Part shown: piece after piece, positions 3,211 through 60,638 of the stretch
Layout: every line of letters begins with the position of its first letter
How positions within the stretch are numbered: position 1 is the stretch's first letter
IMG/VR virus record: IMGVR_UViG_3300034072_000758
Location: 248,001 to 312,000 of that record
Length of the DNA: 64,000 nucleotides
Reading direction: 5' to 3' (one strand)
Program-made: the position numbers and the translations under genes
Notes under the pieces: model-generated
Databases searched by the model: none
Told to the model about the DNA's origin: nothing
Seen by the model: the letters and a program-made list of their open reading frames with translations, nothing else

Positions 3211-3319
3211 CAGATTCGATCTCCTATAAAATATTTGTCCATATTATCATACATTGTGTTTATGTCAATATACTCGGAAAATTATTGACAGTATAACATC
3301 ATTAAAATATATTCCGACC

Positions 3320-5035
3320 ATGAACATTAAGAACCATATTGCCGGATTATTGCGTCGTTCGATTGGCGAACAATTCGATAAGTACGATGAAGTAGTCATA
3401 TCGACTTCGGATAAAGAAGGCGTAGATTTCCAATACAATGGCGCATTCAAACTCGCCAAAGAAGTTGGGACATCGCCAGAAAAAATTGTCGAAATACTTT
3501 GTGCTAACTTCCCAACCGAAGTTGCTTCCACGTCTTTAGGTGGCAAAGGGTTCATGAATTTTTCGGTGAGCCAAGACTATCTTAACAAAACAATCTCGTG
3601 GCTTGCTAACGATAAACGTCTTGGGTTTCGAGAAGGTGTTCCGGGGTTCAGGATTATTATGGATTTTGGTGGACCCAATGTCGCCAAAGCCCTTCATGTC
3701 GGTCACCTTCGTTCGGCAATCATTGGTGACACACTGGCGCGGATATTCCGTTTCGCCGGATGTGAAGTCATCACCGATTGTCATCTAGGTGATTGGGGTT
3801 TTCAGATGGGCCTCTTGATTGTGGCCATTCAGGATTTATATCCCGATCTCCCCTATTTCGATTCAACCTTTGCTGGGGAATATCCACAAACGTCTCCGGT
3901 AACGCTCGCCGATCTGGAAGCGCTTTATCCCATCGCCTCGAAGAAGGCTGAAACCGACGAAGCATTCAGATCACGTGCGCAAGAAGCCACAACCATCCTC
4001 CAAACGCCATCCGACCGAAATGGGTATAAGGAACTGTGGAAACACATCGTTTCTGTTTCGGTCGCACAAATCAAAATCGACTTTGAACGTCTGGACGTAT
4101 CCTTCAATCTGTGGAACGGCGAGAGCCATGTCAATGACATGATCCCGGCGATGATCACCGAGCTTGAGCCTTTCACTAAGGAAGACGATGGCGCAATCAT
4201 CATGCCGCTGGATGATCTTCCACCTCTGATCGTCAAGTCCAAGGCTGGTGCGGCTCTTTATGGTACGACCGATCTGGCGACGATCAAGCAACGTAGCGAA
4301 GAGTATAAACCTTCGGTAATGTTCTATTGCGTGGACTATAGACAGGCTACGCATTTTGAACAGGTCTTCGCCGCTGCCTATAAGGCTGAGTTTACGTATG
4401 CCTCTCTTGAACACCTCAAGAATGGCACAGTCAACGGTCAGGATGGAAAACCGTTCAAGACCAGAACTGGCGGCACTGCGAAGCTGGTTGATCTGATCGA
4501 CATGGCACGGGATGCTGCGCGGGATGCTTTATCTCAATCGGAATCAGCAAAGAAGCTTTCAGAAGACAGTTTTGAAAAAGCGGTCGATGCCATTTCGCTG
4601 GCCGCATTGCGCTTTGGTGAATTGATCAACAAGCGTACCGAATCCTATGTGTTCGACACCGACCGTTTTGGCTTCGAAGGGAAGACCGGACCATATATCA
4701 TCTATCAGTGTGTTCGGATCAAGTCTGCCCTCAGCAAGACGACCGAGCAACCCGGTTATATCGACATCGGTGATGATGAACGTGAAATTGCGATCCTGAT
4801 TGACGGCTTCCAAGAAGCTATTCAACAGACGATGGTGAATCGTATGCCGCACTATCTGGCCACTCATGCCTATGAACTGGCAAGCGCATTCTCGCGGTAT
4901 TACGGGAAGGTTAGCATCCTTCATGAAGCGGATGACGACAAGAGACGTTCACGCTTGGCGCTGTTGTCTCTTGTCTACTCGACGCTCGAATTGGAGCTTG
5001 AGTTGCTGGGGATCAAAATCCCCGACGCGATGTGA
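3320..5035 (+). CDS. argS: Arginyl-tRNA synthetase
   Basis: DFGGPNVAKALHVGHLRSAIIGD (HIGH motif), HLGDWGFQMG, YGTTDLAT, KPFKTRTG, FEGKTGPYIIY, canonical C-terminus LLGIKIPDAM; start moved to ATG 3320. Confidence 0.95.
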   Translation: MNIKNHIAGLLRRSIGEQFDKYDEVVISTSDKEGVDFQYNGAFKLAKEVGTSPEKIVEILCANFPTEVASTSLGGKGFMNFSVSQDYLNKTISWLANDKRLGFREGVPGFRIIMDFGGPNVAKALHVGHLRSAIIGDTLARIFRFAGCEVITDCHLGDWGFQMGLLIVAIQDLYPDLPYFDSTFAGEYPQTSPVTLADLEALYPIASKKAETDEAFRSRAQEATTILQTPSDRNGYKELWKHIVSVSVAQIKIDFERLDVSFNLWNGESHVNDMIPAMITELEPFTKEDDGAIIMPLDDLPPLIVKSKAGAALYGTTDLATIKQRSEEYKPSVMFYCVDYRQATHFEQVFAAAYKAEFTYASLEHLKNGTVNGQDGKPFKTRTGGTAKLVDLIDMARDAARDALSQSESAKKLSEDSFEKAVDAISLAALRFGELINKRTESYVFDTDRFGFEGKTGPYIIYQCVRIKSALSKTTEQPGYIDIGDDEREIAILIDGFQEAIQQTMVNRMPHYLATHAYELASAFSRYYGKVSILHEADDDKRRSRLALLSLVYSTLELELELLGIKIPDAM

Positions 5036-6898: not shown

Positions 6899-7123
6899 TC
6901 AACTTAAAAAGTCTTTAGGGAATAATGCTATTCTACATTGACCATCACTGGTTTTAATCATACGTTCTACATGTTGATTGGATAATGTTTCTTCGGTGTG
7001 GCCGTCTGAGCAAACATCAAATGTTTTGAAACAAGAATCGCATATGACGGTGCCTTCCTCGAAGGAGGACATTTCAAACCCGCAATGTAAACACTCGAAC
7101 TTGATCATACTTCTATTTAACAT
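6899..7123 (-). CDS. Small zinc-ribbon-like protein
   Basis: CLHC...CDSC. Confidence 0.45.
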   Translation of the reverse strand: MLNRSMIKFECLHCGFEMSSFEEGTVICDSCFKTFDVCSDGHTEETLSNQHVERMIKTSDGQCRIALFPKDFLS

Positions 7124-7142: not shown

Positions 7143-7150
7143 AATAAATA
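7143..7150 (+). promoter_or_regulatory. T4-like late promoter, 5 nt before ATG
   Basis: AATAAATA-TCCAC-ATG. Confidence 0.7.
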
Positions 7151-7155
7151 TCCAC

Positions 7156-7539
7156 ATGAGCAACTGGTATAGAAATTTGATCAACCTTCTCGAAGGCGCG
7201 GAACCATTGGTGCTTTATCACGGGACACACGCCAAGTTTGATGGTGTTCCGACCATTCCAGAAAGCGGTGCTGGTCTATATGGGCGCGGGGTTTATTTCT
7301 CGACCGATAAACGTGTTGCGCAAGGCCACGGTCCCACCATTGTCACTTGTACAGTGTCAGGAAAACTCGCCACCAATGCTCAATTGGATGCGGCTAGAGA
7401 ACAAGCATCAGAAGAAGGCTTTGTTAGATCGGAGAAGATGCATCGTGCCAGAGACATCCTTATCGATGCCGGGTATGTGGGTGTTCAGGATAAAGACCTT
7501 GTGGTGGTCTATGTTCAGGATGCTATGACGAGAGTTTAA
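7156..7539 (+). CDS. Leader-bearing ADP-ribosyltransferase-like protein
   Basis: MSNWYRNLINLLE leader; LYHGT...YGRGVYFSTD. Confidence 0.65.
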   Translation: MSNWYRNLINLLEGAEPLVLYHGTHAKFDGVPTIPESGAGLYGRGVYFSTDKRVAQGHGPTIVTCTVSGKLATNAQLDAAREQASEEGFVRSEKMHRARDILIDAGYVGVQDKDLVVVYVQDAMTRV

Positions 7540-10979: not shown

Positions 10980-10987
10980 TATAAATA
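10980..10987 (+). promoter_or_regulatory. T4-like late promoter, 5 nt before ATG
   Basis: TATAAATA-TACGT-ATG. Confidence 0.8.
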
Positions 10988-10992
10988 TACGT

Positions 10993-11802
10993 ATGAGCAA
11001 TTGGTATCGAAATCTTGTAAATCTGATAGAAAGCGCTATAGACGAAGATGTATCTGACGGTTATTACCCGGCAACCGAACGTAACATAAAGCTTGCTAAA
11101 GCCTTTGTATTCGACAAATGGAAAGAGCGAGCCTATGAGCGCATGGGTGGTTTGGATAGCTATTCTCCGCCTACTGATTTAAGCAATTCCTGTAAATTCA
11201 CATCACAGTTTGTCAAGAATATTTTTGGCGGAACCATACAGGGAAACTTCGATCACCAGTATGTCGTCAAGGATGGTGCTATCATCGATTTGAATATCGA
11301 TGCTAAGGATGTCAAGACATTGGGCGATAAAGCTCATGTCCATGATCCTAAGTTCTTTGGAAAGCGTGACCACAAAGCTTCCATGAAAAGCTGCGAACCA
11401 AGAGTAGCCGCATGGACCCAAGAGTTTCTGTCCAAGTACGGTTCGAAGCTCGATAAAAAGCCTATTTACGAACAAGTTATAGAGCCTATTACGGTCTATC
11501 ATGTTACGCCAAAACGTAATTTGAAATCGATCAAATCCAACGGCTTAACTCCACAAATCGGAGATAATAGCACCCGTCTTGGAGAGACCGAAGAAGCCAT
11601 TCATGTATTTTATAATTTGGACGATCTTGAGGATGCGCTTTCGAATTGGGATTTGTTTGACGAAGATGAAGAACTTGTTTGCTTGAAGATAACAGTACCA
11701 AAAAACGAAGTAAAAGACGATCCGGCGTATCCTAATTCTGTAGGATTGATAAAAACGGTTGTTCCGCCACAGAATATAAAGAAGATGAATATAGAGCTAT
11801 GA
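10993..11802 (+). CDS. Leader-bearing protein: papain/transglutaminase-like domain plus ART-like domain
   Basis: MSNWYRNLVNLIE; NSCKF...DHQYV...IIDL; VYHVTPKRNLKSIKSNGLTP. Confidence 0.6.
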   Translation: MSNWYRNLVNLIESAIDEDVSDGYYPATERNIKLAKAFVFDKWKERAYERMGGLDSYSPPTDLSNSCKFTSQFVKNIFGGTIQGNFDHQYVVKDGAIIDLNIDAKDVKTLGDKAHVHDPKFFGKRDHKASMKSCEPRVAAWTQEFLSKYGSKLDKKPIYEQVIEPITVYHVTPKRNLKSIKSNGLTPQIGDNSTRLGETEEAIHVFYNLDDLEDALSNWDLFDEDEELVCLKITVPKNEVKDDPAYPNSVGLIKTVVPPQNIKKMNIEL

Positions 11803-13058: not shown

Positions 13059-13847
13059 TTACCAATCACCCTCATATGAAGGGTCGATGTAAAGCGGATC
13101 GATCATCACAATCTGTCCATTAGAACGCATCATTAGGTTATGTGGGGTAACATCTGCGTGTGGCTCCCAATTCGAAATGAATTTGGAGAGCTTGGCCAAA
13201 TCAGGATCACCGGCAATCGCGTCCTTATCCCTCCACGGTGCCGAATCAATCTGTTCCATCTTCTCACAAAATTCAACAGCCTTGTCAGTAGGGCAAGGAA
13301 CTAAGGTCTCAAGCCTAACCGCTTTAAAGATGCTATTAATTCGCAATGGGTTCCCTTTTATCTTCGGGACATACTTGTTACCCTTGTTGGATAACATGAA
13401 ATGAACAAACTCATCGTAACCCTGATCGTTGCGATACACTTTCAGAACATATGAATATGCCGGATGACTGAACACCGCTCCGTTGATACCCGATCCAATA
13501 AGGTCGAAGCCATAGTTCTTCATTGTCTTAACGAGGCTACGTTTCCATGCCGGGTTTTTTCTAGCCGCTTGTTGATGCACGTTTTTATCAATTTTAGGGT
13601 CATTAAACGATGATTTGAAATTTCGGTAATCATCGAGCGGACCTTCTTCAAGTTTAGAAATGCGTGGCTTGAAAAGCTTCTGGTCACCCTTATTGGTCTT
13701 CAATACTGGCTGGTTGTGTTCATCCTTATCGAACCCTTTGACAACAGCCTTGCGGTTCTTGAATTTACCCACGAGAACTTCATCGCCGACTTCGATGTCT
13801 GGTAATTCAAGTGTCTCTTTACTTTCAAGGATTTCACGATAGCGCAT
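13059..13847 (-). CDS. Leader-bearing protein kinase-like protein
   Basis: MRYREILE; IGSGINGAVF...VLKVY...ADVTPHNLMM...MIDP. Confidence 0.7.
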   Translation of the reverse strand: MRYREILESKETLELPDIEVGDEVLVGKFKNRKAVVKGFDKDEHNQPVLKTNKGDQKLFKPRISKLEEGPLDDYRNFKSSFNDPKIDKNVHQQAARKNPAWKRSLVKTMKNYGFDLIGSGINGAVFSHPAYSYVLKVYRNDQGYDEFVHFMLSNKGNKYVPKIKGNPLRINSIFKAVRLETLVPCPTDKAVEFCEKMEQIDSAPWRDKDAIAGDPDLAKLSKFISNWEPHADVTPHNLMMRSNGQIVMIDPLYIDPSYEGDW

Positions 13848-13856
13848 GTGTATATT

Positions 13857-14234
13857 TTACCAGTTCTTACAGGACCAGTAATTAGCCTTCCACTTTGGGC
13901 CGGGATCGGTATCGCAATGATGTCTTGCTCTATATGATTTTCTGTGTTCGGGATAACGCTTCTTGATCGTCATATCGGGGTCACCGAAATTGACTTTTAC
14001 AACATTATCCTTGTCGTTCTTCACATAGACAGAAAACTTCTTAGGGCCATCTGGGGTTCTGAATGGTTTGTTCAGTGTAACTTCGCGCCCTTGGTATTCA
14101 GCTTCGGTCAGAGTTTCAGACATTTCTACCCAGCCGTATTTTTCAAAGAAATCGTCACCGTGAAGGGTTTCTTCGCAATTTTCACGGTCGTGAGACTCGA
14201 TAAGATTGATTATATTTCGATACCAGTGTGTCAT
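13857..14234 (-). CDS. Leader-bearing phage protein of unknown function
   Basis: GTTAAATA-TAATC-ATG; MTHWYRNIINLIE; KVNFGDP...YRARHHCD...YWSCKNW. Confidence 0.7.
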   Translation of the reverse strand: MTHWYRNIINLIESHDRENCEETLHGDDFFEKYGWVEMSETLTEAEYQGREVTLNKPFRTPDGPKKFSVYVKNDKDNVVKVNFGDPDMTIKKRYPEHRKSYRARHHCDTDPGPKWKANYWSCKNW

Positions 14235-14251
14235 GATTATATTTAACAACT

Positions 14252-14878
14252 TTAATAAGCTTCATCTTTGAATGTGTAATCAAGAAGATTTATATGAGCA
14301 TTTGGTTTCAGACGAACTTCTTGTTCTTCTTCGTATGCCGGATCAGCGTTCATACCCAATGTGGCGACCCAATCGACTTCGTTTTCATCAACCTCGCCTT
14401 TCAGAACTACAATAACCGGATCAGAGATATGCTCGCGGCCCTGCCAGTAAGCTTCTGCCGAATGTTCTTCCCATGTCCAATATATACCTAAGTGACGAGA
14501 GTTCGGCTTCCACCCGCGAGGGACGGCCATCGCGCGATAGAGAATAATCTTGCCATTTTTTATACGCGAGGCGAGTTCATATTCAACCTCCGCATATCGT
14601 CCACGAACGTATTCAGAAAACCAGTTTTTAAATTCCTCAGTGGTATGGTCTACTTCACTACCATTATTTTTTGTAAAGTCCTTGAAAAAATCATCTTCTA
14701 TATCTTCCGAATCGTCTTCGATACCCATGTCTTCGCGGTATTCATCTTCGACCCGTTCACCCGTACCACTACTCCAATCAATATGATCGTAAGTAAATTC
14801 TACGACAGCATCATGAATATCAGTTGGAATCGAAGCACGTTCCATAAGATTAACAAGATTTCTATACCAGTGTGTCAT
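14252..14878 (-). CDS. Leader-bearing ART-like protein
   Basis: MTHWYRNLVNLME; LYRAM...GIYWT...EEEQEVRL. Confidence 0.6.
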   Translation of the reverse strand: MTHWYRNLVNLMERASIPTDIHDAVVEFTYDHIDWSSGTGERVEDEYREDMGIEDDSEDIEDDFFKDFTKNNGSEVDHTTEEFKNWFSEYVRGRYAEVEYELASRIKNGKIILYRAMAVPRGWKPNSRHLGIYWTWEEHSAEAYWQGREHISDPVIVVLKGEVDENEVDWVATLGMNADPAYEEEQEVRLKPNAHINLLDYTFKDEAY

Positions 14879-14883
14879 GAGTA

Positions 14884-14895
14884 TATTTATAAATA
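14884..14895. promoter_or_regulatory. Bidirectional overlapping late promoters
   Basis: Palindrome TATTTATAAATA gives TATAAATA on both strands, each 5 nt from an ATG (14878 minus, 14901 plus). Confidence 0.8.
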
Positions 14896-14900
14896 TTCAC

Positions 14901-15272
14901 ATGCGCGAATACATGACTATCCTAAACGAAATCTACCAAGAGCCGAAAGACTCTTCGTTCACACATGAGGGGGCGCAATATGATCTGAATGCCATCCTCA
15001 AAGCAACGAAGGATAATGAGACCGTTGATGTTGAGATCGCCGATTTGATCTGGGTATTCAAGTACGATCCGATGACCGAGGAAGATGCCGACCGAATATT
15101 CGGTTCCGACTTGGAAGCACCAATCCTGATCACCGTCGAAACCGAGGATGACCAAGAAAAAGTTGTTGTCTTGGATGGAGAGCACCGCCTAGCAAAAGCT
15201 GTGCTCTCAGGTCGAGCCACGTTACCAGCCGTCAAAGTTGATAGAGAATTTCTTTCGAAATTCAAAATTTAA
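14901..15272 (+). CDS. Leader-bearing ParB/Srx-like protein
   Basis: MREYMTILNE; PILI...VLDGEHRLAKA. Confidence 0.7.
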   Translation: MREYMTILNEIYQEPKDSSFTHEGAQYDLNAILKATKDNETVDVEIADLIWVFKYDPMTEEDADRIFGSDLEAPILITVETEDDQEKVVVLDGEHRLAKAVLSGRATLPAVKVDREFLSKFKI

Positions 15273-15560: not shown

Positions 15561-15664
15561 TGCTGCCTCCTAAGTTAACTCGAACGGGTTACCGTAAGTG
15601 TTAGGGTAATATTTTCAAACAGTATCAGGTGCTCGTGTTTTGTCAATGTAATAATAAATATCAT

Positions 15665-16573
15665 ATGCGTTTATATGAAATAATGGCAAATTGGCAAATA
15701 GAAGAACAATACGCTTATGGTGATTGTGATATACTTGCTATAGGTTTACATATAAAATTGAAGTTACCACTCAGAGCCGTGGTCGATGGTGACAAGTATT
15801 CGCATGTTTGGGTATCCCCATCACCCAATACCGCACTTGATATATGGGGAGAGCGCCCAGAAAAAGAAATATATCAAGCTTGGATCGCAGAAGATGATCA
15901 AGGTGGCGAAATTAAAACCGTCTCCCTCGAATGGCTGATGGCACATTTACCAGCCAAACAAAAAGAAAATCTAAATCAGCGAGTGAAAAAATCGTTAGAA
16001 GATTTTAAAATAGTTCACCCGAACAGTAGGTTGATTGAATCTTTCGGAAAAGTATTTAACTTTGATCCACAATTAGGCGACAAAACCCTGTTCGATCTGG
16101 ATGTTAAGGCTCGAAATGGCAGCTTAACACAAGACGACTTGAAATCTTTCAGAGCATTATTGAACCGCGATAAAAACGCATTTGTTCGTATGTATCATGG
16201 CACATCAAGCTCACATGACGTTCTGGGAAAAGGATTACTACCAACCTCACCAAATCGCTCTAAAAGCCTCCAAAGTGCCGCAGGATATGTTTATGTAGCA
16301 TATGATCCGAGGATGGCGTTAGCGTTCGCACGACACGCTTACCCATCTGATAATGAATTTACCGTTTATGCCGTGGATGTGACGATAGCTCGTTTATTAC
16401 CAGACCACGATCAATTACGAAACAAACGACATTTCGCCGGTATAGAAGTGGGAGACAGTCTTGTCGATTCATTAATCTTTGGTGGTGGAGCAAGAGTTAA
16501 GGGAAAGATCAGTCCGATGCAAATTCATATCTACGGTAAATTTGATAAGAGCGGTAAAGAGATTGATTTTTGA
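15665..16573 (+). CDS. Leader-bearing protein: papain-like domain plus ART-like domain
   Basis: AATAAATA-TCAT-ATG; MRLYE; YGDCDILAIGL...HVWV...ALDIWG; RLIE linker; MYHGT...GLLP...YVYVA. Confidence 0.6.
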   Translation: MRLYEIMANWQIEEQYAYGDCDILAIGLHIKLKLPLRAVVDGDKYSHVWVSPSPNTALDIWGERPEKEIYQAWIAEDDQGGEIKTVSLEWLMAHLPAKQKENLNQRVKKSLEDFKIVHPNSRLIESFGKVFNFDPQLGDKTLFDLDVKARNGSLTQDDLKSFRALLNRDKNAFVRMYHGTSSSHDVLGKGLLPTSPNRSKSLQSAAGYVYVAYDPRMALAFARHAYPSDNEFTVYAVDVTIARLLPDHDQLRNKRHFAGIEVGDSLVDSLIFGGGARVKGKISPMQIHIYGKFDKSGKEIDF

Positions 16574-30567: not shown

Positions 30568-30578
30568 TAAATAAATTC

Positions 30579-31724
30579 ATGCGTTTACTTGAGTTAAAAC
30601 ATTCCGAACAAACTGTTGTACTGTATAGAGGCGACAATAAGCGTATCGATGTGTTTGATATTGAACAAACCGATATTAAGGCTCTGTTCGGAAAAGGTAT
30701 CTATTTGACTGATAGCAAAGTAGTCGCAAAGGATTACGCAAAGAAAGGCATTAATGTATTCTTCGAGGGTGATTACCCTTCTAAGAGTAAGAAAAGTCTA
30801 CTTAACAAATACTTGTTCAAAGTCATGATGGAAGAACTTAACCTTAAAGAAAAGGTCTACATGGCGACAAACAAAAAATATGAGCCGGAATTTCCGCGAT
30901 CTGGTCCTGAGCGGGTTCAAGCCATTGCTATGCTTAAGCTGGCAGTGAAGCACGTTGTTGCCGAGACGTTAGCTAAGGCCGTCACACTTTGGAATCAGCG
31001 TCGAAAGAATGTCAAGTTCCACACTGATACAACCGGGGCAGTCGTCATGATCGACAAGTCTGTTAAGGGGAGCGTATCTGAGTTCCACATTCCGACCGAT
31101 TATATGGCGCGTGTATTGGATGGCGAAGCACCCCTCCCAGACAAAGCTTTGAAGGTCGTTCGAGACACATTCGATGCCTTCCGTAGAAGCAAAGGTGGAT
31201 CAATCGAAGATGCTTTAGATTTTAGAAGTGTTGCGCACAAAGATAGCTTGGTCACTAAACATCTGAACTTCGATCAGTTCATAAAATACTATAAATCGCA
31301 TGGTTCCGAATATGCTTGGAGTGATGATGATGTGCGTGGTGGTGATAATCAGAACCCATCATTTGACTTCATCTTCAATGGTCAACACGCCGGGGAAATT
31401 TTAAAGATCAAAGAATTTCAGGATCATTTGATCGCGGGTCTCATGACTATTGGATATGTCGGTTTCAAATATGATGGTGGTATCCGCGCTGGGGGTGCTC
31501 TGGCTCGTGGCGGTGGTGGTTTGCGTCACACAGCGTATTCATTCTGGAACGCAGAATATATCAACGCACATCGCGTCAATGATGAAGAACCAGAAGACGC
31601 AAGAAACTATAATCCAAAGGTTACCGTTGACGATTATGAATTTGCGATTAACAGTGCTGTGGGCGAATCTGTCGAGATCGCCGAGACGTTCGATACGTCG
31701 CTTGATGTAAAATACAGAGGGTAA
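30579..31724 (+). CDS. Leader-bearing ART-like (polyvalent-protein type) protein
   Basis: AATAAATA-AATTC-ATG; MRLLE; LYRG...F...LFGKGIYLTDS..VA..YA; GYVGFKY. Confidence 0.65.
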   Translation: MRLLELKHSEQTVVLYRGDNKRIDVFDIEQTDIKALFGKGIYLTDSKVVAKDYAKKGINVFFEGDYPSKSKKSLLNKYLFKVMMEELNLKEKVYMATNKKYEPEFPRSGPERVQAIAMLKLAVKHVVAETLAKAVTLWNQRRKNVKFHTDTTGAVVMIDKSVKGSVSEFHIPTDYMARVLDGEAPLPDKALKVVRDTFDAFRRSKGGSIEDALDFRSVAHKDSLVTKHLNFDQFIKYYKSHGSEYAWSDDDVRGGDNQNPSFDFIFNGQHAGEILKIKEFQDHLIAGLMTIGYVGFKYDGGIRAGGALARGGGGLRHTAYSFWNAEYINAHRVNDEEPEDARNYNPKVTVDDYEFAINSAVGESVEIAETFDTSLDVKYRG

Positions 31725-35482: not shown

Positions 35483-35554
35483 ATTTTATACTCCCGATAT
35501 AAATGATATAGTTTCACCTTACCACATGTTTTCTGGTTGTCAATAAATACACCT

Positions 35555-36202
35555 ATGCGTTATCACGAAATACTTAGAGAAAGCCGAGAAGCATCTTTGT
35601 ATCATGGCTATAAGAAGCCGGAACATGCTCGCATGGCTCTTGAGGCTAACGAAATGTTGGGGACAACTACTCAGCGCTGGTGGCCTAACGGGGTTGAACT
35701 CGTCCCCGAAGATGACCCTAAGTACCGCGAATCATACTGGATGAAGGGTATCTCGTTGACCCGCGATCTTAGCTACGCAGCGCATTGGGGAGACATTATT
35801 TTTGAACTCGATCAGCGCGCATTGTCTTACAATTATAAGATCATACCATTCAACTGGATGCGAGGTCGAGCACAGAAATATTCAGTCAATGATACGCAAA
35901 GCGACGTAGCTCACTTTAGAAAGGGTGAGCGCGAAGAGTTTCTGATCCTTGAAAAGGGACCAAATAATTACATGTTTCCGAAAGACCCTGAGTTCGATGA
36001 TTACCCGGAGTATGAACCGCGTTTAGACCTCAAGGCTTTTAAGACCCCAGCTAACAAAAAGCTGGCTCCATTGTCTCGCTACTTAAAAGCAATTTATGTC
36101 GAGCCGTATTTCATGAACAAATATCCCGAAACATATGACTATCAGTATTTTATTGATCATCCTAAATTCGGTGGATTTAAGTCTTTCCCGCGCAGAAAAT
36201 AA
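35555..36202 (+). CDS. Leader-bearing ART-like protein
   Basis: AATAAATA-CACCT-ATG; MRYHEILRE; LYHG...GISLTRD...EREE. Confidence 0.6.
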   Translation: MRYHEILRESREASLYHGYKKPEHARMALEANEMLGTTTQRWWPNGVELVPEDDPKYRESYWMKGISLTRDLSYAAHWGDIIFELDQRALSYNYKIIPFNWMRGRAQKYSVNDTQSDVAHFRKGEREEFLILEKGPNNYMFPKDPEFDDYPEYEPRLDLKAFKTPANKKLAPLSRYLKAIYVEPYFMNKYPETYDYQYFIDHPKFGGFKSFPRRK

Positions 36203-43081: not shown

Positions 43082-43540
43082 ATGTTTGATCTGAATGGTA
43101 TATTGCCTGAGAGCTATCCCAATATATTGATAAAACTTACCGATCTTATGGATATTCCTGTATTAGTTGACGCTATTGAAAATATAGATAATGATTCAAA
43201 AACTATTCCAATGATGCTTCATTTGAGAGTGGGTGGGGCCTATGATCGCATGATTGCTTATTATTTCGACGCGATCAGAAATCTTCAAAAAACGGACAAA
43301 GAAATAGCATCTATGTTCGCTATCTCTTTAAAAGACGTATATTCTATGCGAGCGGGTATTTTTGAAGCGTGTCTGAAACGAGCGATACCCATGCTCTACC
43401 ATGACTATTTCCAACACAATAGGAGTGGTTGCGAATGGAGCTTCGAAACTTCCTACAGAAGGAAACTTATCGATACAAACTTGCGCAACCCTCACGCATT
43501 GTATATAAATAGCTTCATTCGTTTCCACAGGTACGCCTAA
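43082..43540 (+). CDS. Hypothetical protein with a possible HTH
   Basis: TDKEIASMFAISLKDVY; TTGATT..TATAAT promoter and GGAG RBS. Confidence 0.55.
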   Translation: MFDLNGILPESYPNILIKLTDLMDIPVLVDAIENIDNDSKTIPMMLHLRVGGAYDRMIAYYFDAIRNLQKTDKEIASMFAISLKDVYSMRAGIFEACLKRAIPMLYHDYFQHNRSGCEWSFETSYRRKLIDTNLRNPHALYINSFIRFHRYA

Positions 43541-43548
43541 ATATTCCC

Positions 43549-43839
43549 ATGAGAGACATCCTAAACAAACTGAGCGGCTTAACCGAAAGTGAATCCTTGA
43601 CGCACGAGGATAAGAAATACGTATGCTATACGGAAGATAGCAACGGCAATCAGCTATCTCAATTTTATGGCGATGCTATCAACGATCTTCTCAAAGAAGC
43701 CCTTCGTTCGGATGACTCTGTTCATGTTGTGACTATATTCCGCAATGAGAATAACGAACACGTTGCTACTTATACTCGCACGGACGCGCCAACTCTTCGT
43801 GGTGATGGCTGGGAACTGATTAAACAAAATATTGGTTGA
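43549..43839 (+). CDS. Leader-bearing small late protein
   Basis: CCTAAATA-TTCCC-ATG; MRDILNKLSGLTE. Confidence 0.65.
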   Translation: MRDILNKLSGLTESESLTHEDKKYVCYTEDSNGNQLSQFYGDAINDLLKEALRSDDSVHVVTIFRNENNEHVATYTRTDAPTLRGDGWELIKQNIG

Positions 43840-47194: not shown

Positions 47195-47303
47195 TTGCTC
47201 AACCAGAAAGGCGCTTACCCTCTGGGAGAAGCCTACTATGATAGATGGATGACTCCGTGTCAACACTTATTTTCAAACTTTTTGTGTTTGAATAAATATG
47301 TGT

Positions 47304-47837
47304 ATGATCGATTTAGAAAAGATACAGGAATCCCAACACCTTTTGGATGTTCTTCTACAGATGGAAGACGTTCTCGACTCGTTGGATTTGTACGTTTTTG
47401 AGAACTGGTATAATGGCGAGATCATTGATGGTCCGAACATCAAGAGATACTGGCTCGATTTCACGTTAAAATACGCATGGGACAAGCAACCAGACGATAA
47501 AGCTGCTTATCGTCTTATGAAACATGGTATTCGTGTATCCTTTGATAAGATGAGATATTCTAAGGGTAAGGAAGAACCGGAGATCGTTGAAGATGAAGAC
47601 GATGAAGAAAAGGTATTTCTTGCTGTAAAGATCAGTATACCTCGTATGCTTTGCGTACAAATTGCCGACGAAGAACTTGACTTCTACGATGAAGAAATTG
47701 ATGCGGAGGACGTTTCTGACGCTAAGGACTCTGACATCGAGAGTGAAGACGAATATTATGGAGACCAAGAAGGCGACGATGATATGAACGCCGACGCAGA
47801 AGGAGAGGCCCCAGATGACCAAGAAAAACCTCAGTGA
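47304..47837 (+). CDS. Acidic late protein of unknown function
   Basis: AATAAATA-TGTGT-ATG; LDSLDLYVFENW..GEII.GP...RYW. Confidence 0.75.
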   Translation: MIDLEKIQESQHLLDVLLQMEDVLDSLDLYVFENWYNGEIIDGPNIKRYWLDFTLKYAWDKQPDDKAAYRLMKHGIRVSFDKMRYSKGKEEPEIVEDEDDEEKVFLAVKISIPRMLCVQIADEELDFYDEEIDAEDVSDAKDSDIESEDEYYGDQEGDDDMNADAEGEAPDDQEKPQ

Positions 47838-49383
47838 GGGCCTAAGACGTGGTGATCTGGAAGACCAAGTTCTTCCTATGATCTCCTTCGATGAATATGA
47901 AAGCAACTTCGGCGACACCGCCCTGACTATCGCTTTTTATATTCATGGTAAGGACGCCGCGACCGACTTCAACAAATTTCTCCAAAAGTCTCACGTAAAC
48001 TTCCTCACGACCGATATTTCGCCATCGCAGGATAAGGACGGTTACTACGCTGTATTTGTCGAGTTCAAGATCGATGACAAGCTTATCGCCAACTTCTTTG
48101 ACATCATCGAAGAGGTAAATAACCTCACCCTGATCGAAGAATGGCAAATCCACTTGAATAACCGCGAACTCATGGCTCTCTCAAAAAAAGCCTTGGAGTT
48201 CTATATCCACGCCAAGTACGAGCGCGTGATCATGAAGGAAGATGTTCAAGAAGATACCAGCGTCGAACAAAAGGCCAAGGCATTCATTGTTAAAAATTTA
48301 GAACACCTCAGCAAGTATTATTCCCTACGTGATTTCAAGAGTGAAGACGCCGCGCGCGAGTTCTATTTTAACTCCTTGGAAAAGGACGATAAATCACCTT
48401 GGGTTCAAGCCATGCCAAGTAGTTTCCACGGTACTGAACTGAATAAGGCAATTAGTCTACTTGTGCCAATCTACAAGGCTGGTAAGAATTTCCGTATCGG
48501 CAAAGCTCCAAAGAAAGTTGCTAGAGACCCTTGGGCCGAAATTGATGTCACCACACCAAGCCTCGCGCCATTACAGTCTGTAGGCATTCTGAACCCATTC
48601 GACGGCTATAAAGTGAAGGGTGTGAAGATGCTCTCGATCAACGATATTAATATGACAGAAGACCATAGTTATACTACTGGTGGAGTCAAAAAAGTCGAAT
48701 GGTTGGCCGAGAAGATTAAAGAGAATGGGAAATTTACGGCCATTATCGTGAACCAAGATTATTCTATTTTGGACGGGCATCACCGTTTTAGAGCCATTCG
48801 TGATTATCTGCGTTACAAGACCATTCCCGCGCTGGTAATCGAAATCAATGACGGAACCAACGAAAGCTATCTGATCGAAGGCTCTGGGGAAGAAGTGACT
48901 TTTGAAAATGTTCACATTGATTTTCATCACGATCAACATGATTATGAATTACGTGCCATCATTCTGGGTAAAGTTGTTGGCTATATACGCTATGTCGTTT
49001 ATCAGGACGAAGTTCACCTCAGCATGATCAAGGTCCACGAGGATTACCGTCGCAAGGGAATAGCTACACAACTGGTGAAGCATCTACAAAAGATGTTCCC
49101 CAATACTGAAATACAAAAGGGTTCAATGACCGATGATGGTTCAAAGCTGTTTGGTGTCTTGCCAACTCATACTGTCGTTGATCCTAATTATGCGCCCAAG
49201 TTCAAGCGCCACGAAGAAGTCAAGAATATGTTAAAGAAATATTCCGATGACTTTGAGGCAATGTCGGATAAGTCAACCTTTATGGATACTCACTCGGATT
49301 GGAATGATCTCCACGACGAAAACGACAAGTTAGATCAAGAGCTTTACGGTAAAAAACCAACAAAAACAATATTTAAGGTGTAA
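47815..49383 (+). CDS. Multidomain late protein: N-terminal domain, ParB-like and GNAT
   Basis: MTKKNLSE; ILDGHHRFRA (ParB); IKVHEDYRRKGIATQL (GNAT). Confidence 0.75.
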   Translation: MTKKNLSEGLRRGDLEDQVLPMISFDEYESNFGDTALTIAFYIHGKDAATDFNKFLQKSHVNFLTTDISPSQDKDGYYAVFVEFKIDDKLIANFFDIIEEVNNLTLIEEWQIHLNNRELMALSKKALEFYIHAKYERVIMKEDVQEDTSVEQKAKAFIVKNLEHLSKYYSLRDFKSEDAAREFYFNSLEKDDKSPWVQAMPSSFHGTELNKAISLLVPIYKAGKNFRIGKAPKKVARDPWAEIDVTTPSLAPLQSVGILNPFDGYKVKGVKMLSINDINMTEDHSYTTGGVKKVEWLAEKIKENGKFTAIIVNQDYSILDGHHRFRAIRDYLRYKTIPALVIEINDGTNESYLIEGSGEEVTFENVHIDFHHDQHDYELRAIILGKVVGYIRYVVYQDEVHLSMIKVHEDYRRKGIATQLVKHLQKMFPNTEIQKGSMTDDGSKLFGVLPTHTVVDPNYAPKFKRHEEVKNMLKKYSDDFEAMSDKSTFMDTHSDWNDLHDENDKLDQELYGKKPTKTIFKV

Positions 49384-57026: not shown

Positions 57027-57031
57027 GGGTC

Positions 57032-58048
57032 TTACATATTTTTCAGAGTGTTGTAGATAGCAATAAGCTTCTGGCTTTGAATGTCTTTGCTAGTGATACT
57101 ATTCAGACCTTCAATTACGATCTGATCAATCGACTGATAATCGACGTTTTCTTCAAACTCAGCGGCTTCAACCGATACCGCTTGCGGAACCAATTCCAGC
57201 TTACGAAGCCCATAGTTTTTGATGAACTCTTCCTTGATGACCTGAGACTCTTCATATGTAATGTCAAAGTCTATGGCGACCCGTGCCGACATCTTTTGCT
57301 TGAGCATTTCATTAGGCTTATTGATCATGTCGCTAAGACGCATGGTTCGGAACAACGGTTGTTCATCCCAAGCCTTAAAGATGGGGTCTTTACCCCATTC
57401 CAACATCATAATCCCACGGTCCTGATCCCAAGCATCCGAATAGTTGAATGGAAAAGTATTACCAATATAGACCACGTTCTTCTTTTGCTGGCGGATGTGG
57501 AAGTGTCCAGAGAATACATATTCTTGGTTCACAAACGAACTATGAGTAACCGAGTGACCAGTCTCAGGCATGACGACTTTCGCGTTCATCATAAAGCCAC
57601 CCATTTCCAAATGACCAAATGCATAGCGTGTCTTGATATTCGGAAGCTTCTTGTGTTCGTCCCCGACCAGCCAAGGCAACAAAAGAACATCGTCCATGAC
57701 TGTGGGTTCGGTAATTACCTTGATGTTGGGAAGAAGCTTGGCGAACTCGACCGACGACAGGTCGCGCTTATCACGATAGAACAGATCGTGGTTGCCGGGA
57801 AGCCAGATTACATTGAAGGCTTCGTTGAGCTTTTCCATACCACGAAGGCCGTAGTGGAGCGTCGAAACGGCAACAGAGTGGCGATTATCAAAGTAATCAC
57901 CACAGAAGATCATGGTTTCAGCGCCCCACGTTTTCCCCTGTTCAATAGCCCAATCGATAAACTCTAAGTTATCAAGATTAGCTTGGGGCGAATTACCCGT
58001 TCTACCAAAGTGAATATCAGTAAAAGAAATGGCTTTCTTAAAGAGCAT
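57032..58048 (-). CDS. Recombination nuclease subunit (T4 gp47/SbcD/Mre11-like)
   Basis: TDIHFG, GDYFDNR, GNHD, GHLE, SGHFH. Confidence 0.95.
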   Translation of the reverse strand: MLFKKAISFTDIHFGRTGNSPQANLDNLEFIDWAIEQGKTWGAETMIFCGDYFDNRHSVAVSTLHYGLRGMEKLNEAFNVIWLPGNHDLFYRDKRDLSSVEFAKLLPNIKVITEPTVMDDVLLLPWLVGDEHKKLPNIKTRYAFGHLEMGGFMMNAKVVMPETGHSVTHSSFVNQEYVFSGHFHIRQQKKNVVYIGNTFPFNYSDAWDQDRGIMMLEWGKDPIFKAWDEQPLFRTMRLSDMINKPNEMLKQKMSARVAIDFDITYEESQVIKEEFIKNYGLRKLELVPQAVSVEAAEFEENVDYQSIDQIVIEGLNSITSKDIQSQKLIAIYNTLKNM

Positions 58049-59822: not shown

Positions 59823-59850
59823 AAAAAGCCTCCCAACCGGGAGGCTTTTT
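59823..59850. terminator. Bidirectional intrinsic terminator
   Basis: AAAAAGCCTCCC-AACC-GGGAGGCTTTTT between convergent genes. Confidence 0.9.
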
Positions 59851-60638
59851 TAATCGTTTGTTCCGACTGCTGCGGCCTTGGCTGCTGCGGCGGCTTCTTG
59901 TTGTTTCTTCATTTCCATTTCGTGTTCGATCTGGCGAGTATGAGACGGGCTGCTACCATACATCATGAGCAAATCGTCACGCAAGTGCTGGTGTTGTTTC
60001 TCAATGTTCAGGATACGAGTGAAGCACATCTTCATACAAGTGGTCAGATAACTGAACGGGTTAGATGATTTGCTTTCGTCAAATTGAAGACCAACCTGAG
60101 ACATCTGAACTAACGCTTGCCCTTTCATTTCCTCGGCGTAGGTGTAGCCTCGCCAGTTCGACTTCTCAGCATAACGAGTGACCATGATTAGCATCATACG
60201 GGCCAGACGACGATTGATCGTCCCGTGCGTGATACAGAAGTGGCCATTATCGAAGCCACCCACCCAATGTGATCTCAGAACTTCTTTGGGGCCTTCGGGT
60301 GTCATAATGTAATGCTTGAAAGGTGGGAAAGGAGTCTTCTTCCAAGGGGTCGAGTTCTTCTTTTGTTTGTCGGTCGCGTCTTTGAGCGGAATATGCTCGG
60401 CAGTCATGACACGCAAGACGATGTTCTCAGGTGTCAATTTCTTCTCTTGTTTCTTCTTGGTAAGACTTTCGGCGATAATTTGTTCAATCAATTCGTCATT
60501 AAACTTATTGACATCATCAACGATATAATCATATTGAATATACTTTTCATCAAGATAAGAACAATATGAAGCTTTACTTAAATTAATCTCACGTAGAAGG
60601 TCTTTGTTTCGAACAAATTCTACTGGTTTCTTAATCAT
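59850..60638 (-). CDS. Late-transcription sigma factor (T4 gp55-like)
   Basis: VRNKDLL.EI, NWRGYTYAEEM...A......QFDESKSSNPFSYLT...F.RIL..EK; lies near gp47/gp46 as in T4-like genomes. Confidence 0.85.
   Translation of the reverse strand: MIKKPVEFVRNKDLLREINLSKASYCSYLDEKYIQYDYIVDDVNKFNDELIEQIIAESLTKKKQEKKLTPENIVLRVMTAEHIPLKDATDKQKKNSTPWKKTPFPPFKHYIMTPEGPKEVLRSHWVGGFDNGHFCITHGTINRRLARMMLIMVTRYAEKSNWRGYTYAEEMKGQALVQMSQVGLQFDESKSSNPFSYLTTCMKMCFTRILNIEKQHQHLRDDLLMMYGSSPSHTRQIEHEMEMKKQQEAAAAAKAAAVGTND

What the first reader, a model, noticed from the sequence alone, without database searches (positions are those of the whole stretch)
14876..14903. 28-bp bidirectional, leaderless late expression unit, and a window-wide TAAATA-N5-ATG rule
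Seen: CAT-GAGTA-TATTTATAAATA-TTCAC-ATG contains a 12-bp palindrome that gives TATAAATA on both strands, each exactly 5 nt from a start codon, with no room for a Shine-Dalgarno. The same 5-nt spacing recurs at 7156, 10993, 14234(-), 30579, 35555, 43549 and 47304, with 4 nt at 15665 and an AAAATA variant at 13847(-). Established: T4 gp55 promoters are a lone TATAAATA with transcription starting a few nt downstream. Inference: these late mRNAs start at or next to the AUG and are translated leaderless. A cassette this small would be easy to graft onto new cargo genes and might resist shut-off of SD-led translation.
Basis: partly seen in the sequence, partly recalled or inferred. Interest (0 to 1): 0.7.

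Follow-up and report, generated by a model that had tools for sequence, protein, structure and literature searches.

The report
Back-to-back leaderless late promoters
A giant T4-related phage places its late-gene promoter box exactly five bases before the start codon of about 60 genes, so that the late messages probably begin with AUG and need no ribosome-binding site; the 28-bp element is two such promoters set back to back.

Summary
Window 14876-14903 reads CAT-gagta-TATTTATAAATA-ttcac-ATG. TAAATA-N5-ATG occurs 11 times in the window against 0.8 expected. In the whole 517-kb phage genome, 56 of 318 TAAATA boxes have ATG at N5, against a background of about 7.

The genome is a T4-superfamily jumbo phage. 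It has a gp23-type capsid gene, and a gp55-type late sigma gene lies in the window at 59850-60638(-). In T4 the late box occupies -13..-6, so N5 puts +1 on the A of ATG.

Sequence tests agree with leaderless late mRNAs:
- None of the 58 motif genes has a Shine-Dalgarno sequence.
- The start codon is always ATG.
- Position -1 is a pyrimidine in 42 of 46 genes.
- Position -12 is A or C.
- The 5' ends are less structured than those of SD genes.
- The genes encode virion, tail or terminase proteins, or carry T4-like capsid-targeting N-termini.

The only homolog of the + gene, in another phage, keeps TATAAATA-N5-ATG.

The rule covers only about half of the late promoters. The rest sit 20-40 nt upstream of SD-led starts, as in T4. 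T4, Atu_ph07, Phosso and PA5oct show no N5 peak. No RNA data exist, so the 5' ends remain inferred.

Verdict: a new variant of known kinds.

The parts
14884..14895 (.). 12-bp palindrome TATTTATAAATA. It holds two overlapping late-promoter boxes, TATAAATA on + at 14888-14895 and on - at 14884-14891.
14901..15272 (+). 123-aa gene whose ATG lies 5 nt after the + box. The predicted +1 is A14901. Its N-terminus MREYMTILNE is like a capsid-targeting peptide, and it contains LDGEHRLAKA, a ParB-like motif by my own reading.
   Evidence: The homolog P0003 aligns from residue 1 and has TATAAATA-N5-ATG.
14252..14878 (-). 208-aa ORFan gene whose ATG lies 5 nt after the - box. The predicted +1 is the complement of T14878. 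Its N-terminus is MTHWYRNLVNLME (second targeting-like peptide type).
   Evidence: The database's automatic gene call starts 11 codons too late.
7145..7158 (+). TAAATA-N5-ATG before a 127-aa gene (MSNWYRNLINLLE...; weak ART-PolyVal match).
7106..7119 (-). TAAATA-N5-ATG before a 69-aa ORF (MIKFE...). It diverges from the 7156 site across 47 bp.
10980..10995 (+). TATAAATA-N5-ATG before a 269-aa gene (MSNWYRNLVNLIE...).
13845..13859 (-). Variant TAAAATA-N5-ATG before a 262-aa gene (MRYREILESKE...).
14232..14245 (-). TAAATA-N5-ATG before a 125-aa gene (MTHWYRNIINLIE...).
15655..15667 (+). TAAATA-N4-ATG before a 302-aa gene (MRLYEIM...).
30568..30581 (+). TAAATA-N5-ATG before a 381-aa gene (MRLLELK...; weak ART-PolyVal/DUF3990 match).
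35544..35557 (+). TAAATA-N5-ATG before a 215-aa gene (MRYHEILRE...).
43538..43551 (+). TAAATA-N5-ATG before a 96-aa gene (MRDILNKL...).
47293..47306 (+). TAAATA-N5-ATG before a 177-aa gene (MIDLEKIQE...).
59850..60638 (-). Gene for the gp55-type late sigma factor that should read these boxes.
   Evidence: phrog_12791 E=6e-76; phrog_234 E=7e-18; T4 gp55, E=8e-5; homologs annotated 'sigma factor for late transcription'

Best explanation
The 28-bp element is a pair of back-to-back late promoters of the T4 type, with the core [A/C]TAAATA. They are read by host RNA polymerase carrying the phage's own gp55-like sigma. Each box ends 5 nt before a start codon. In the T4 family the box occupies -13..-6, so transcription should start on the A of ATG. 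The + strand RNA would then begin at 14901 and the - strand RNA at 14878, and each would be a leaderless mRNA whose 5'-terminal AUG is bound directly by the ribosome without a Shine-Dalgarno sequence.

The same geometry heads about 58 genes of this 517-kb phage. These are virion, tail-fibre, baseplate, adaptor and terminase genes, plus about 20-25 small, mutually unrelated genes that share only a short N-terminal peptide. That peptide resembles the T4 capsid-targeting sequence, so these genes probably encode proteins that are packaged and injected.

Shown here: the motif, its spacing and statistics, the sigma gene, the gene classes, the absence of SD, the exclusive use of ATG, the conservation in a homolog, and the contrast with T4. 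Inferred: the transcription start point, leaderless translation, and capsid targeting.
For: - Geometry: PMC1524935 places TATAAATA at -13..-6, so N5 puts +1 on the A of ATG.
- Sharp genome-wide N5 peak: 56 sites against a background of about 7. The hexamer is specific and ATG is the only codon at N5.
- Unconstrained flanks fit the T4-family late promoter and a transcription start. Position -12 is A in 34 and C in 10 of 46 genes. Position -13 is A or T. Nothing is conserved further upstream. Positions -5..-1 are AT-rich. Position -1 is T or C in 42 of 46 and never G.
- A gp55-type sigma is encoded in the window.
- None of the 58 motif genes has an SD, against 357 of 718 other genes.
- In 48 of 58 genes the ATG is the first in the ORF.
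- In 36 of 58 genes the upstream neighbour is divergent, against 27% for other genes. Four divergent pairs (eight genes) are separated by only 21-28 bp, which leaves no room for another promoter.
- The same box also lies 20-40 nt upstream of SD-led starts, for example before the portal and sheath genes. It therefore behaves as a promoter and not as a ribosome-binding signal.
- The genes served are late-type genes.
- The first 45 nt of these RNAs are less structured than those of SD genes (MFE -4.0 against -5.6 kcal/mol, p=4e-5). With the zero-length leader and the AUG this matches the three determinants of leaderless initiation in PMC8459731.
- The start codon is fixed by peptide-level conservation with synonymous codon changes.
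- The homolog P0003 aligns from residue 1, and its gene in another phage has TATAAATA-N5-ATG.
- A second jumbo lineage, G002, shows the same peak, with 18 of 39 sites at N5.
- T4 control: the TATAAATA-to-ATG distance peaks at 23-29 nt.
Against: - There is no transcript evidence at all. No RNA run holds this phage.
- Homologs of the co-activator gp33 and the sliding clamp gp45 were not found by phmmer or Pfam. Only a gp44-like clamp loader was found.
- The nearest large relatives lack an N5 peak: the 524-kb contig G001, Phosso, Atu_ph07 and PA5oct. The geometry is therefore not a property of the sigma family.
- About half of the other genes also lack a recognisable SD by my crude criteria. Initiation without an SD on leadered RNA is therefore possible in this system.
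- About a third of the motif genes are linked by shared N-terminal modules and are not fully independent observations.
- The lower folding energy is partly explained by lower GC (0.39 against 0.43).
Confidence: 0.72

Rival explanations
1. The box is a late promoter, but the RNAs are not strictly leaderless or are not the translated templates. Transcription may start 1-3 nt away from the A. Alternatively, the proteins may be made mainly from longer read-through RNAs by coupling or by initiation without an SD.
For: - An N4 shoulder exists, with 16 sites.
- Among relatives, the ortholog of one virion gene carries GGTAAATA-N7-ATG, and a 70-aa family carries the box at N5, N6 or N8. Leaders of 0-3 nt are therefore tolerated.
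- 22 motif genes are in tandem with an upstream gene at gaps of 3-64 nt.
- Half of the other genes lack a clear SD.
Against: - The N5 peak is 3.5 times the N4 peak and 6 times the N6 peak.
- Pyrimidine at -1 and A at +1 fit a start exactly on the A.
- 36 of 58 genes head divergent units, where no read-through RNA from an upstream gene on the same strand exists.
Confidence: 0.13
2. TAAATA-N5 is a translation signal and not a promoter. It would be an AU-rich enhancer or alternative ribosome-binding element, placed where an SD would sit, on mRNAs that start further upstream.
For: - The box lies where an SD would lie (-11..-6), and the motif genes lack an SD.
- AU-rich leaders can enhance translation (established knowledge).
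Against: - The motif equals the T4-family late promoter, including the -12 A/C preference (PMC1524935).
- The identical box also occurs 20-40 nt upstream of genes that have their own SD, where it cannot act as a ribosome-binding site.
- It marks late gene classes.
- One-mismatch variants are not tolerated, which is unlike a loose AU-rich enhancer.
- Divergent pairs only 21-28 bp apart leave no other promoter.
Confidence: 0.07
3. The boxes are -10-like elements read by the host's primary sigma factor, giving constitutive or early leaderless genes, and not by the phage's gp55-like factor.
For: Leaderless genes with a -10 box abutting the ORF are the usual cellular pattern (PMC12340547 and PMC3160421).
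Against: - TAAATA is a poor TATAAT, because it has A where the invariant last T should be.
- There is no -35 or extended -10 conservation.
- The box is invariant at all six positions, as in T4-like late promoters.
- The genes served are virion genes.
- The phage carries the matching sigma.
Confidence: 0.05
4. The pattern is chance, or merely a by-product of gene duplication in which copies inherited the upstream sequence.
For: About 20-25 of the 58 genes share one of two N-terminal peptide types.
Against: - 0 of 100 shuffles reach the window count.
- More than 30 motif genes are unrelated structural genes.
- Full-length BLAST families among the motif genes are tiny.
- The N5 spacer letters differ between copies while the spacing is kept.
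Confidence: 0.03

Closest known systems
Bacteriophage T4 late promoters (gp55/gp33/gp45-dependent), including the divergent pair of genes 26 and 51
   Same: - The box is the same: TATAAATA, or at least [A/C]TAAATA.
- There is no -35 element.
- The phage encodes a gp55-type sigma.
- The promoters serve virion genes.
- The T4 26/51 promoters even share the identical TATTTATAAATA palindrome, and the T4 53/4 promoters are also back to back.
   Different: In T4 every late promoter is followed by a 17-30-nt leader with an SD. The TATAAATA-to-ATG distance peaks at 23-29 nt, and only 1 of 32 boxes lies at N5, before no annotated gene. Here about half of the boxes abut the AUG with no leader. gp33 and gp45 homologs were not detected here.
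Cellular leaderless genes with the -10 box adjacent to the ORF (Deinococcus-Thermus, Actinobacteria, Caulobacter)
   Same: - A promoter box lies at a fixed short distance from ATG.
- There is no SD.
- AUG is required.
- The 5' end is unstructured.
Sources: PMC12340547, PMC3160421, PMC4117421 and PMC8459731.
   Different: Those boxes are read by the primary sigma factor and serve housekeeping genes. Here the box belongs to a phage late sigma factor and defines a temporal class of viral genes.
Lambda cI mRNA from pRM (the classic leaderless phage message)
   Same: A phage mRNA that starts with AUG and is translated without an SD (PMC10491246, listed; otherwise established knowledge).
   Different: It is a single regulatory gene of a temperate phage read by sigma-70, not a programme of about 60 late genes.
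T4 internal proteins and Alt with the capsid-targeting sequence (CTS)
   Same: - Highly diverse proteins share only a roughly 10-aa N-terminal peptide ending in [LI]-x-E. In T4, ipII and ipIII begin MKTYQEFIAE and ipI begins MKTFKEF (PMC3012670).
- Here the peptides are MRY[FH]E[IL]LxE and M[ST][NH]WYRN[LI][IV]NL[IM]E.
- A gp21-type prohead protease is present.
- Some cargo proteins look like ADP-ribosyltransferases, as Alt is.
   Different: The T4 ip genes have SD-bearing leaders and no box within 70 nt. Here the targeting peptide is fused directly to a leaderless late promoter. Packaging and cleavage are untested.
Poxvirus late promoters (TAAATG initiator overlapping the start codon)
   Same: A viral late promoter element is fused to the ATG, so late mRNAs carry almost no encoded leader (my own knowledge, not tested here).
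   Different: The polymerase and host domain are unrelated, and poxvirus late RNAs acquire a 5' poly(A) head. This is an analogy only.

Membership tests
T4-type (gp55-dependent) late promoter | Conserved TATAAATA-like box, with a variable first position or two, and no -35 element | tested here: met
   TAAATA is invariant, -12 is A in 34 and C in 10 of 46, -13 is A or T, and nothing is conserved upstream of -13. Compare PMC1524935.
T4-type (gp55-dependent) late promoter | The phage encodes a gp55-family sigma factor | tested here: met
   Window 59850-60638(-): phrog_12791 E=6e-76 and phrog_234 E=7e-18; T4 gp55 by phmmer E=8e-5; homologs annotated as late sigma.
T4-type (gp55-dependent) late promoter | Co-activator gp33 and sliding clamp gp45 are present | tested here: inconclusive
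   phmmer with T4 gp33 and gp45 found nothing, and PF02916 did not ring, though its control rang nowhere either. A gp44-like clamp loader is present. These small proteins diverge quickly.
T4-type (gp55-dependent) late promoter | Located in front of late (virion, packaging) genes | tested here: met
   The genes served include TerL, gp25-like baseplate wedge, head-tail adaptor, tail fibres and virion structural proteins. Leadered copies precede the portal and sheath genes.
T4-type (gp55-dependent) late promoter | AT-rich segment between the box and the start | tested here: met
   Positions -5..-1 are 54-76% A+T, against 55% for the genome. Compare PMC2988020.
T4-type (gp55-dependent) late promoter | Transcription starts about 6 nt after the box, late in infection, and depends on gp55 | not testable with these tools
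   No RNA run holds the phage.
Leaderless mRNA gene | Promoter box at a fixed distance that places +1 on the start codon | tested here: met
   Sharp N5 peak, combined with the -13..-6 geometry.
Leaderless mRNA gene | No Shine-Dalgarno sequence | tested here: met
   0 of 58 motif genes, against 357 of 718 other genes.
Leaderless mRNA gene | AUG (not GUG or UUG) start codon | tested here: met
   The only enriched triplet at N5 is ATG, with 56 sites against 10 for the next most common triplet.
Leaderless mRNA gene | Accessible, weakly structured 5' end | tested here: met
   MFE over +1..+45 is -4.0 against -5.6 kcal/mol, p=4e-5. Unpaired probability is only a trend (p=0.09). GC content is a confound.
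Leaderless mRNA gene | Mapped primary 5' end at the A of AUG, and translation from that RNA | not testable with these tools
   No RNA, ribosome-profiling or proteomic data exist.
T4-type capsid-targeted internal proteins (CTS) | A short conserved N-terminal peptide on otherwise unrelated proteins, ending in a [LI]-x-E protease site | tested here: met
   22 genes matched by pattern. The peptides end in ILNE, ILRE, LLE, LIE or LME. Synonymous codon changes show selection at the peptide level.
T4-type capsid-targeted internal proteins (CTS) | gp21-family prohead protease encoded | tested here: met
   T4 gp21 by phmmer, E=1.2e-15, at C1:323839.
T4-type capsid-targeted internal proteins (CTS) | Protein present in the capsid with the peptide cleaved off | not testable with these tools
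   This needs virion mass spectrometry.

The most novel reading that the evidence does not exclude
In some T4-superfamily phages the late programme also switches the mode of translation. About half of the late transcription units would be made as 5'-AUG leaderless mRNAs by gp55-type promoters fused to the start codon. Phage-encoded bS21 and IF1 both lie behind TAAATA boxes here, so they may be made late and may retune host ribosomes toward these messages. The roughly 45-bp module 'box + N5 + AUG + targeting peptide' would then be a portable cassette that turns any ORF into a late-expressed, capsid-packaged, injected protein. That would explain the fast turnover of such cargo genes.
Probability: 0.2. 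Interest if true: 0.85.

Novelty: new variant of a known kind. Interest (0 to 1): 0.62.

Why it matters
- T4 late transcription is a textbook system, and its messages are thought of as SD-led. A phage that makes terminase, baseplate, tail-fibre and dozens of putative injected proteins from leaderless late mRNAs would show that a viral temporal class can be defined at transcription and translation together by a 14-nt signal.
- It offers a concrete handle on why huge phages carry bS21 and IF1.
- It gives a minimal bidirectional late expression unit of 28 bp.
- It has a practical side. Automatic gene callers mis-start such genes: the database call for the - gene is 11 codons short, which cuts off the very peptide that may direct packaging.
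- The IMG/VR scans suggest that box-abutting-AUG genes with T4-like targeting peptides are common in uncultured T4-like phages. The habit may therefore be widespread and overlooked.

Tried and rejected
- Near-identity search of 10 kb against cultured phages found no match.
- NCLDV capsid search found nothing, so a giant eukaryotic virus is rejected.
- RNA evidence was sought twice. Only DNA-type metagenome runs hold the phage. Laying four runs showed an identical strain and close relatives whose contigs do not span 14876-14903, so there is no informative variation.
- Relatives: 80 IMG/VR loci around a conserved virion gene behave like T4, with 18-30-nt leaders, apart from one gene with GGTAAATA-N7.
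- Whole genomes of the 524-kb relative G001, Phosso, Atu_ph07 and PA5oct show no N5 peak. No cultured model was found.
- The pattern for the second peptide type (MSNWY) found nothing in IMG/VR.
- Raw counts of TATAAATA-Nx-ATG-MKT[FY] in IMG/VR do not discriminate between spacings. Only the quality of the hits favours N5.
- gp45 and gp33 were not found. A T4 regB homolog was not found. IF3 was not found.
- Pfam gives nothing for the two genes of the unit, or for most cargo genes. Both are near-ORFans in the 5.8-billion-protein set.
- The idea that the TAA inside the box is simply the upstream gene's stop codon holds for only 6 of 58 genes.
- Literature searches found no paper linking leaderless initiation with T4-type late promoters or jumbo phages.
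Full report
**What is in the sequence.** Window 14870-14910 reads gtgtgtCATgagtaTATTTATAAATAttcacATGcgcgaat. CAT at 14876-14878 is the start of a 208-aa gene on the - strand (14252-14878). ATG at 14901-14903 starts a 123-aa gene on the + strand (14901-15272). The 12-bp palindrome at 14884-14895 gives TATAAATA on both strands, and each box ends 5 nt before its ATG. CATG also creates an in-frame ATG at 14877 for the + ORF. The only homolog, P0003, aligns from its residue 1 to the 14901 start, and the database's own gene call uses 14901, so 14901 is the start. I add 7108(-), which forms a second divergent pair with 7156. I discount 26179(+), which opens only a 12-codon ORF.

**Is it more than chance?** TAAATA-N5-ATG occurs 11 times in the window against 0.81 expected, and none of 100 shuffles reaches 11. 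The window is part of a single 516,805-bp virus record with terminal repeats. In that genome the distance from TAAATA to ATG has one sharp peak, with N5 = 56 and N4 = 16 against a background of about 7. Single-mismatch variants of the hexamer show no such peak, and ATG is the only enriched triplet at N5. A motif search upstream of 776 crudely called genes, with nothing presupposed, returns two classes. One has AGGAG at -13..-11 and the other has TAAATA at -11.

**What the genome is.** It has a T4 gp23-type capsid gene and no NCLDV capsid. phmmer with T4 proteins finds homologs of gp20, gp21, gp17, gp18, gp43 and gp44. Its SbcC-like protein and late sigma are nearest to those of the jumbo phages Phosso, Atu_ph07, PA5oct, CBB and RaK2-like phages, at about 40% identity. 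A gp55-type late sigma gene lies in the window at 59850-60638(-) (phrog_12791, E=6e-76).

**Geometry.** The T4 late promoter TATAAATA lies at -13..-6. The first position is poorly conserved among T4-like phages, and Aeh1 uses CTAAATA (PMC1524935). TAAATA followed by five bases and then ATG therefore places +1 on the A of ATG. The flanks that I did not constrain fit this reading:
- Position -12 is A in 34 of 46 genes and C in 10.
- Position -13 is A or T.
- Nothing is conserved further upstream, so there is no -35 element.
- Positions -5..-1 are AT-rich.
- Position -1 is T or C in 42 of 46 genes and never G, which is the usual pyrimidine/purine signature of a start point.

**Tests of the leaderless reading.**
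- Of 58 genes that start at an N5 or N4 site, none has an SD, against 357 of 718 other genes. In 48 of the 58 the ATG is the first in the ORF.
- 36 of 58 have a divergent upstream neighbour, against 27% for other genes. In four divergent pairs the two start codons are only 21-28 bp apart, which leaves no room for another promoter.
- The first 45 nt of these RNAs fold less stably than those of SD genes (-4.0 against -5.6 kcal/mol, p=4e-5), partly because GC is lower.
- Start-codon identity, zero leader length and accessibility are the three determinants of leaderless initiation reported for Caulobacter (PMC8459731).
- Only 6 of 58 boxes use their TAA as the stop codon of an upstream gene.

**Which genes.** Outside the window the motif heads these genes:
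- the large terminase;
- a gp25-like baseplate wedge protein;
- a head-tail adaptor;
- several tail-fibre proteins;
- large virion structural proteins of 2423, 1773, 782, 351 and 258 aa.

None of the motif genes I annotated is a replication or nucleotide-metabolism gene.

**The rule is not universal.** Another 45-55 intergenic [A/C]TAAATA boxes lie 20-40 nt upstream of SD-led starts, for example before the portal and sheath genes. The phage therefore uses one box in two geometries. This argues that the box is a promoter and not a ribosome-binding signal.

**Control and precedent in T4.** In T4 the TATAAATA-to-ATG distance peaks at 23-29 nt, and only 1 of 32 boxes lies at N5, before no annotated gene. 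T4 already has divergent late promoters. Genes 26 and 51 share the same TATTTATAAATA core, and genes 53 and 4 are back to back, but all have SD-bearing leaders. The bidirectional palindrome is therefore known. What differs here is the loss of the leaders, which shrinks the unit to 28 bp.

**The cargo genes.** The motif genes in the window share N-termini of two kinds, MRY[FH]E[IL]LxE and M[ST][NH]WYRN[LI][IV]NL[IM]E, on otherwise unrelated proteins.
- 22 genes match these patterns. 19 of them have the N5 or N4 box, and one (13847-) has the TAAAATA variant.
- Codons vary synonymously between copies (CGT/CGC, TAT/TAC, AGC/TCA/TCT), so selection acts on the peptide and the ATG is the true start.
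- The peptides resemble the T4 capsid-targeting sequence, read here from the T4 record: MKTYQEFIAE for ipII and ipIII, and MKTFKEF for ipI.
- T-even internal proteins are described as highly diverse defence proteins that share only that sequence (PMC3012670).
- A gp21-type prohead protease is present.
- Two of the window's proteins give weak ART-PolyVal matches directly after the peptide, which recalls T4 Alt.

I infer that these are packaged, injected proteins. This is untested.

**Conservation elsewhere.**
- The + gene's only homolog (46% identity, aligned from residue 1) lies on a 175-kb T4-like contig of 36% GC. It is preceded by TATAAATAcctttATG and begins MKTFKHYITE. Box, spacing and targeting-type peptide are thus kept while more than half of the residues have changed.
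- A scan for the box plus MRYFE finds a second jumbo lineage, G002. Of its 39 TAAATA-N0..12-ATG sites, 18 are at N5, and the genes again have such N-termini.
Of these, 84 have ORFs of at least 40 aa and 28 continue as strict T4-like targeting peptides.
- N6 and N8 controls give 46 and 40 such ORFs and 3 strict peptides each. They include a 70-aa family with the box at N5, N6 or N8.
- Leaders of 0-3 nt therefore seem tolerated and fairly common among uncultured T4-like phages.
- By contrast the 524-kb relative G001, Phosso, Atu_ph07 and PA5oct show no N5 peak. Some 50 non-redundant loci of more distant relatives look like T4.

**Side observations bearing on mechanism.**
- The phage encodes bS21 and IF1 but no IF3.
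- IF1 has ATAAATA 26 nt upstream of an SD and a TTG start. bS21 follows a ClpX-like gene that has CTAAATA 28 nt upstream. Both may therefore be late genes.
- Phage bS21 has been proposed to favour phage transcripts late in infection (PMC9723584).
- The phage ArgRS (window 3254-5035) is closest, at 43-47% identity, almost only to Caulobacterales.
- C. crescentus has 375 leaderless mRNAs that are translated as well as leadered ones (PMC4117421).

These are hints and not evidence.

**What is missing.** No RNA run holds this phage. The DNA runs show only an identical strain, plus relatives that do not span the unit. The start point, leaderless translation and packaging are therefore inferred. I found no paper describing leaderless T4-type late genes. 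phiKZ and AR9, the jumbo phages with mapped starts, have none.

**Verdict.** It is a new variant of known kinds: T4 late promoters, leaderless genes with a promoter box abutting the ORF, and T4 capsid-targeting peptides.

Noticed in passing
window 7156-7539(+), 10993-11802(+), 13059-13847(-), 13857-14234(-), 14252-14878(-), 14901-15272(+), 15665-16573(+), 30579-31724(+), 35555-36202(+); also about 12 genes elsewhere in the genome: Unrelated small proteins share only a 9-13-aa N-terminus, MRY[FH]E[IL]LxE or M[ST][NH]WYRN[LI][IV]NL[IM]E. It resembles the T4 capsid-targeting sequence (MKTYQEFIAE) and ends in an [LI]-x-E protease-type site. They are probably packaged, injected proteins.
   Followed up: partly
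window 7156-7539(+) and 30579-31724(+): Weak ART-PolyVal/DUF3990 matches below Pfam cut-offs (E about 3e-5 to 5e-5) begin right after the N-terminal peptide. Several paralogs have a YHG/YRG motif. These may be Alt-like ADP-ribosyltransferases carried in the capsid.
   Followed up: partly
window 59850-60638(-): A gp55-type late sigma factor gene lies in the same window as the promoters it should read. It is itself SD-led.
   Followed up: yes
window 14252-14878(-): The public protein collection holds this gene as a 197-aa product that starts 11 codons downstream. Automatic gene calling missed the SD-less start and cut off the conserved N-terminal peptide.
   Followed up: yes
window 3254-5035(+): A phage-encoded arginyl-tRNA synthetase with a TTG start. 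Its nearest cellular relatives (43-47% identity) are almost all Caulobacterales. This is a weak host hint, and that group is known for efficient leaderless translation.
   Followed up: partly
G000:C1:501044-501199(-) and G000:C1:30364-30549(-): The phage encodes ribosomal protein bS21 and initiation factor IF1 but no IF3. Both genes lie behind leadered [A/C]TAAATA boxes, so they may be late genes. bS21 follows a ClpX-like gene.
   Followed up: partly
L048-L110 (IMG/VR relatives), upstream of the ortholog of G000:C1:461841-462896: About 30 distinct relatives keep GGTAAATA-N7-ATG before this virion gene, which implies a leader of about 2 nt and no SD. The rest of their TAAATA boxes have T4-like 18-30-nt leaders.
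   Followed up: partly
L258-L377 and L378-L478 (IMG/VR): A widespread family of about 70 aa in T4-like contigs (MKTF.Q[LI]RE..GRKP.G..VF.KK) carries TATAAATA at N5, N6 or N8 from its ATG in different clades, never with an SD.
   Followed up: partly
window 14901-15272(+): The + gene and its homolog share the motif VVLDG(E/I)HRLAKA, which resembles the ParB/sulfiredoxin DGHHR motif by my own reading. Pfam gave no hit. Another gene in the window (47815-49383) has ParB_N plus GNAT domains.
   Followed up: no
G000:C1:10707/10734, 99985/100014, 225596/225618; window 7108/7156: Four more divergent pairs of box-abutting starts exist. The pair at 225596/225618 uses the same TATTTATAAATA palindrome as the finding.
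   Followed up: yes
window 54972-58048(-) and 61957-63201(-): SbcC/SbcD-like (gp46/gp47) recombination nuclease genes and a nicotinate phosphoribosyltransferase gene. These are SD-led genes of early or middle type on the opposite strand from most motif genes.
   Followed up: no
L136 5145-5876(+): In the 175-kb T4-like contig that holds P0003, an ADPrib_exo_Tox-family gene has a targeting-like N-terminus (MRKFTTFLSE) behind a leadered TAAATA box with an SD. It is the leadered counterpart of the same cargo logic.
   Followed up: no
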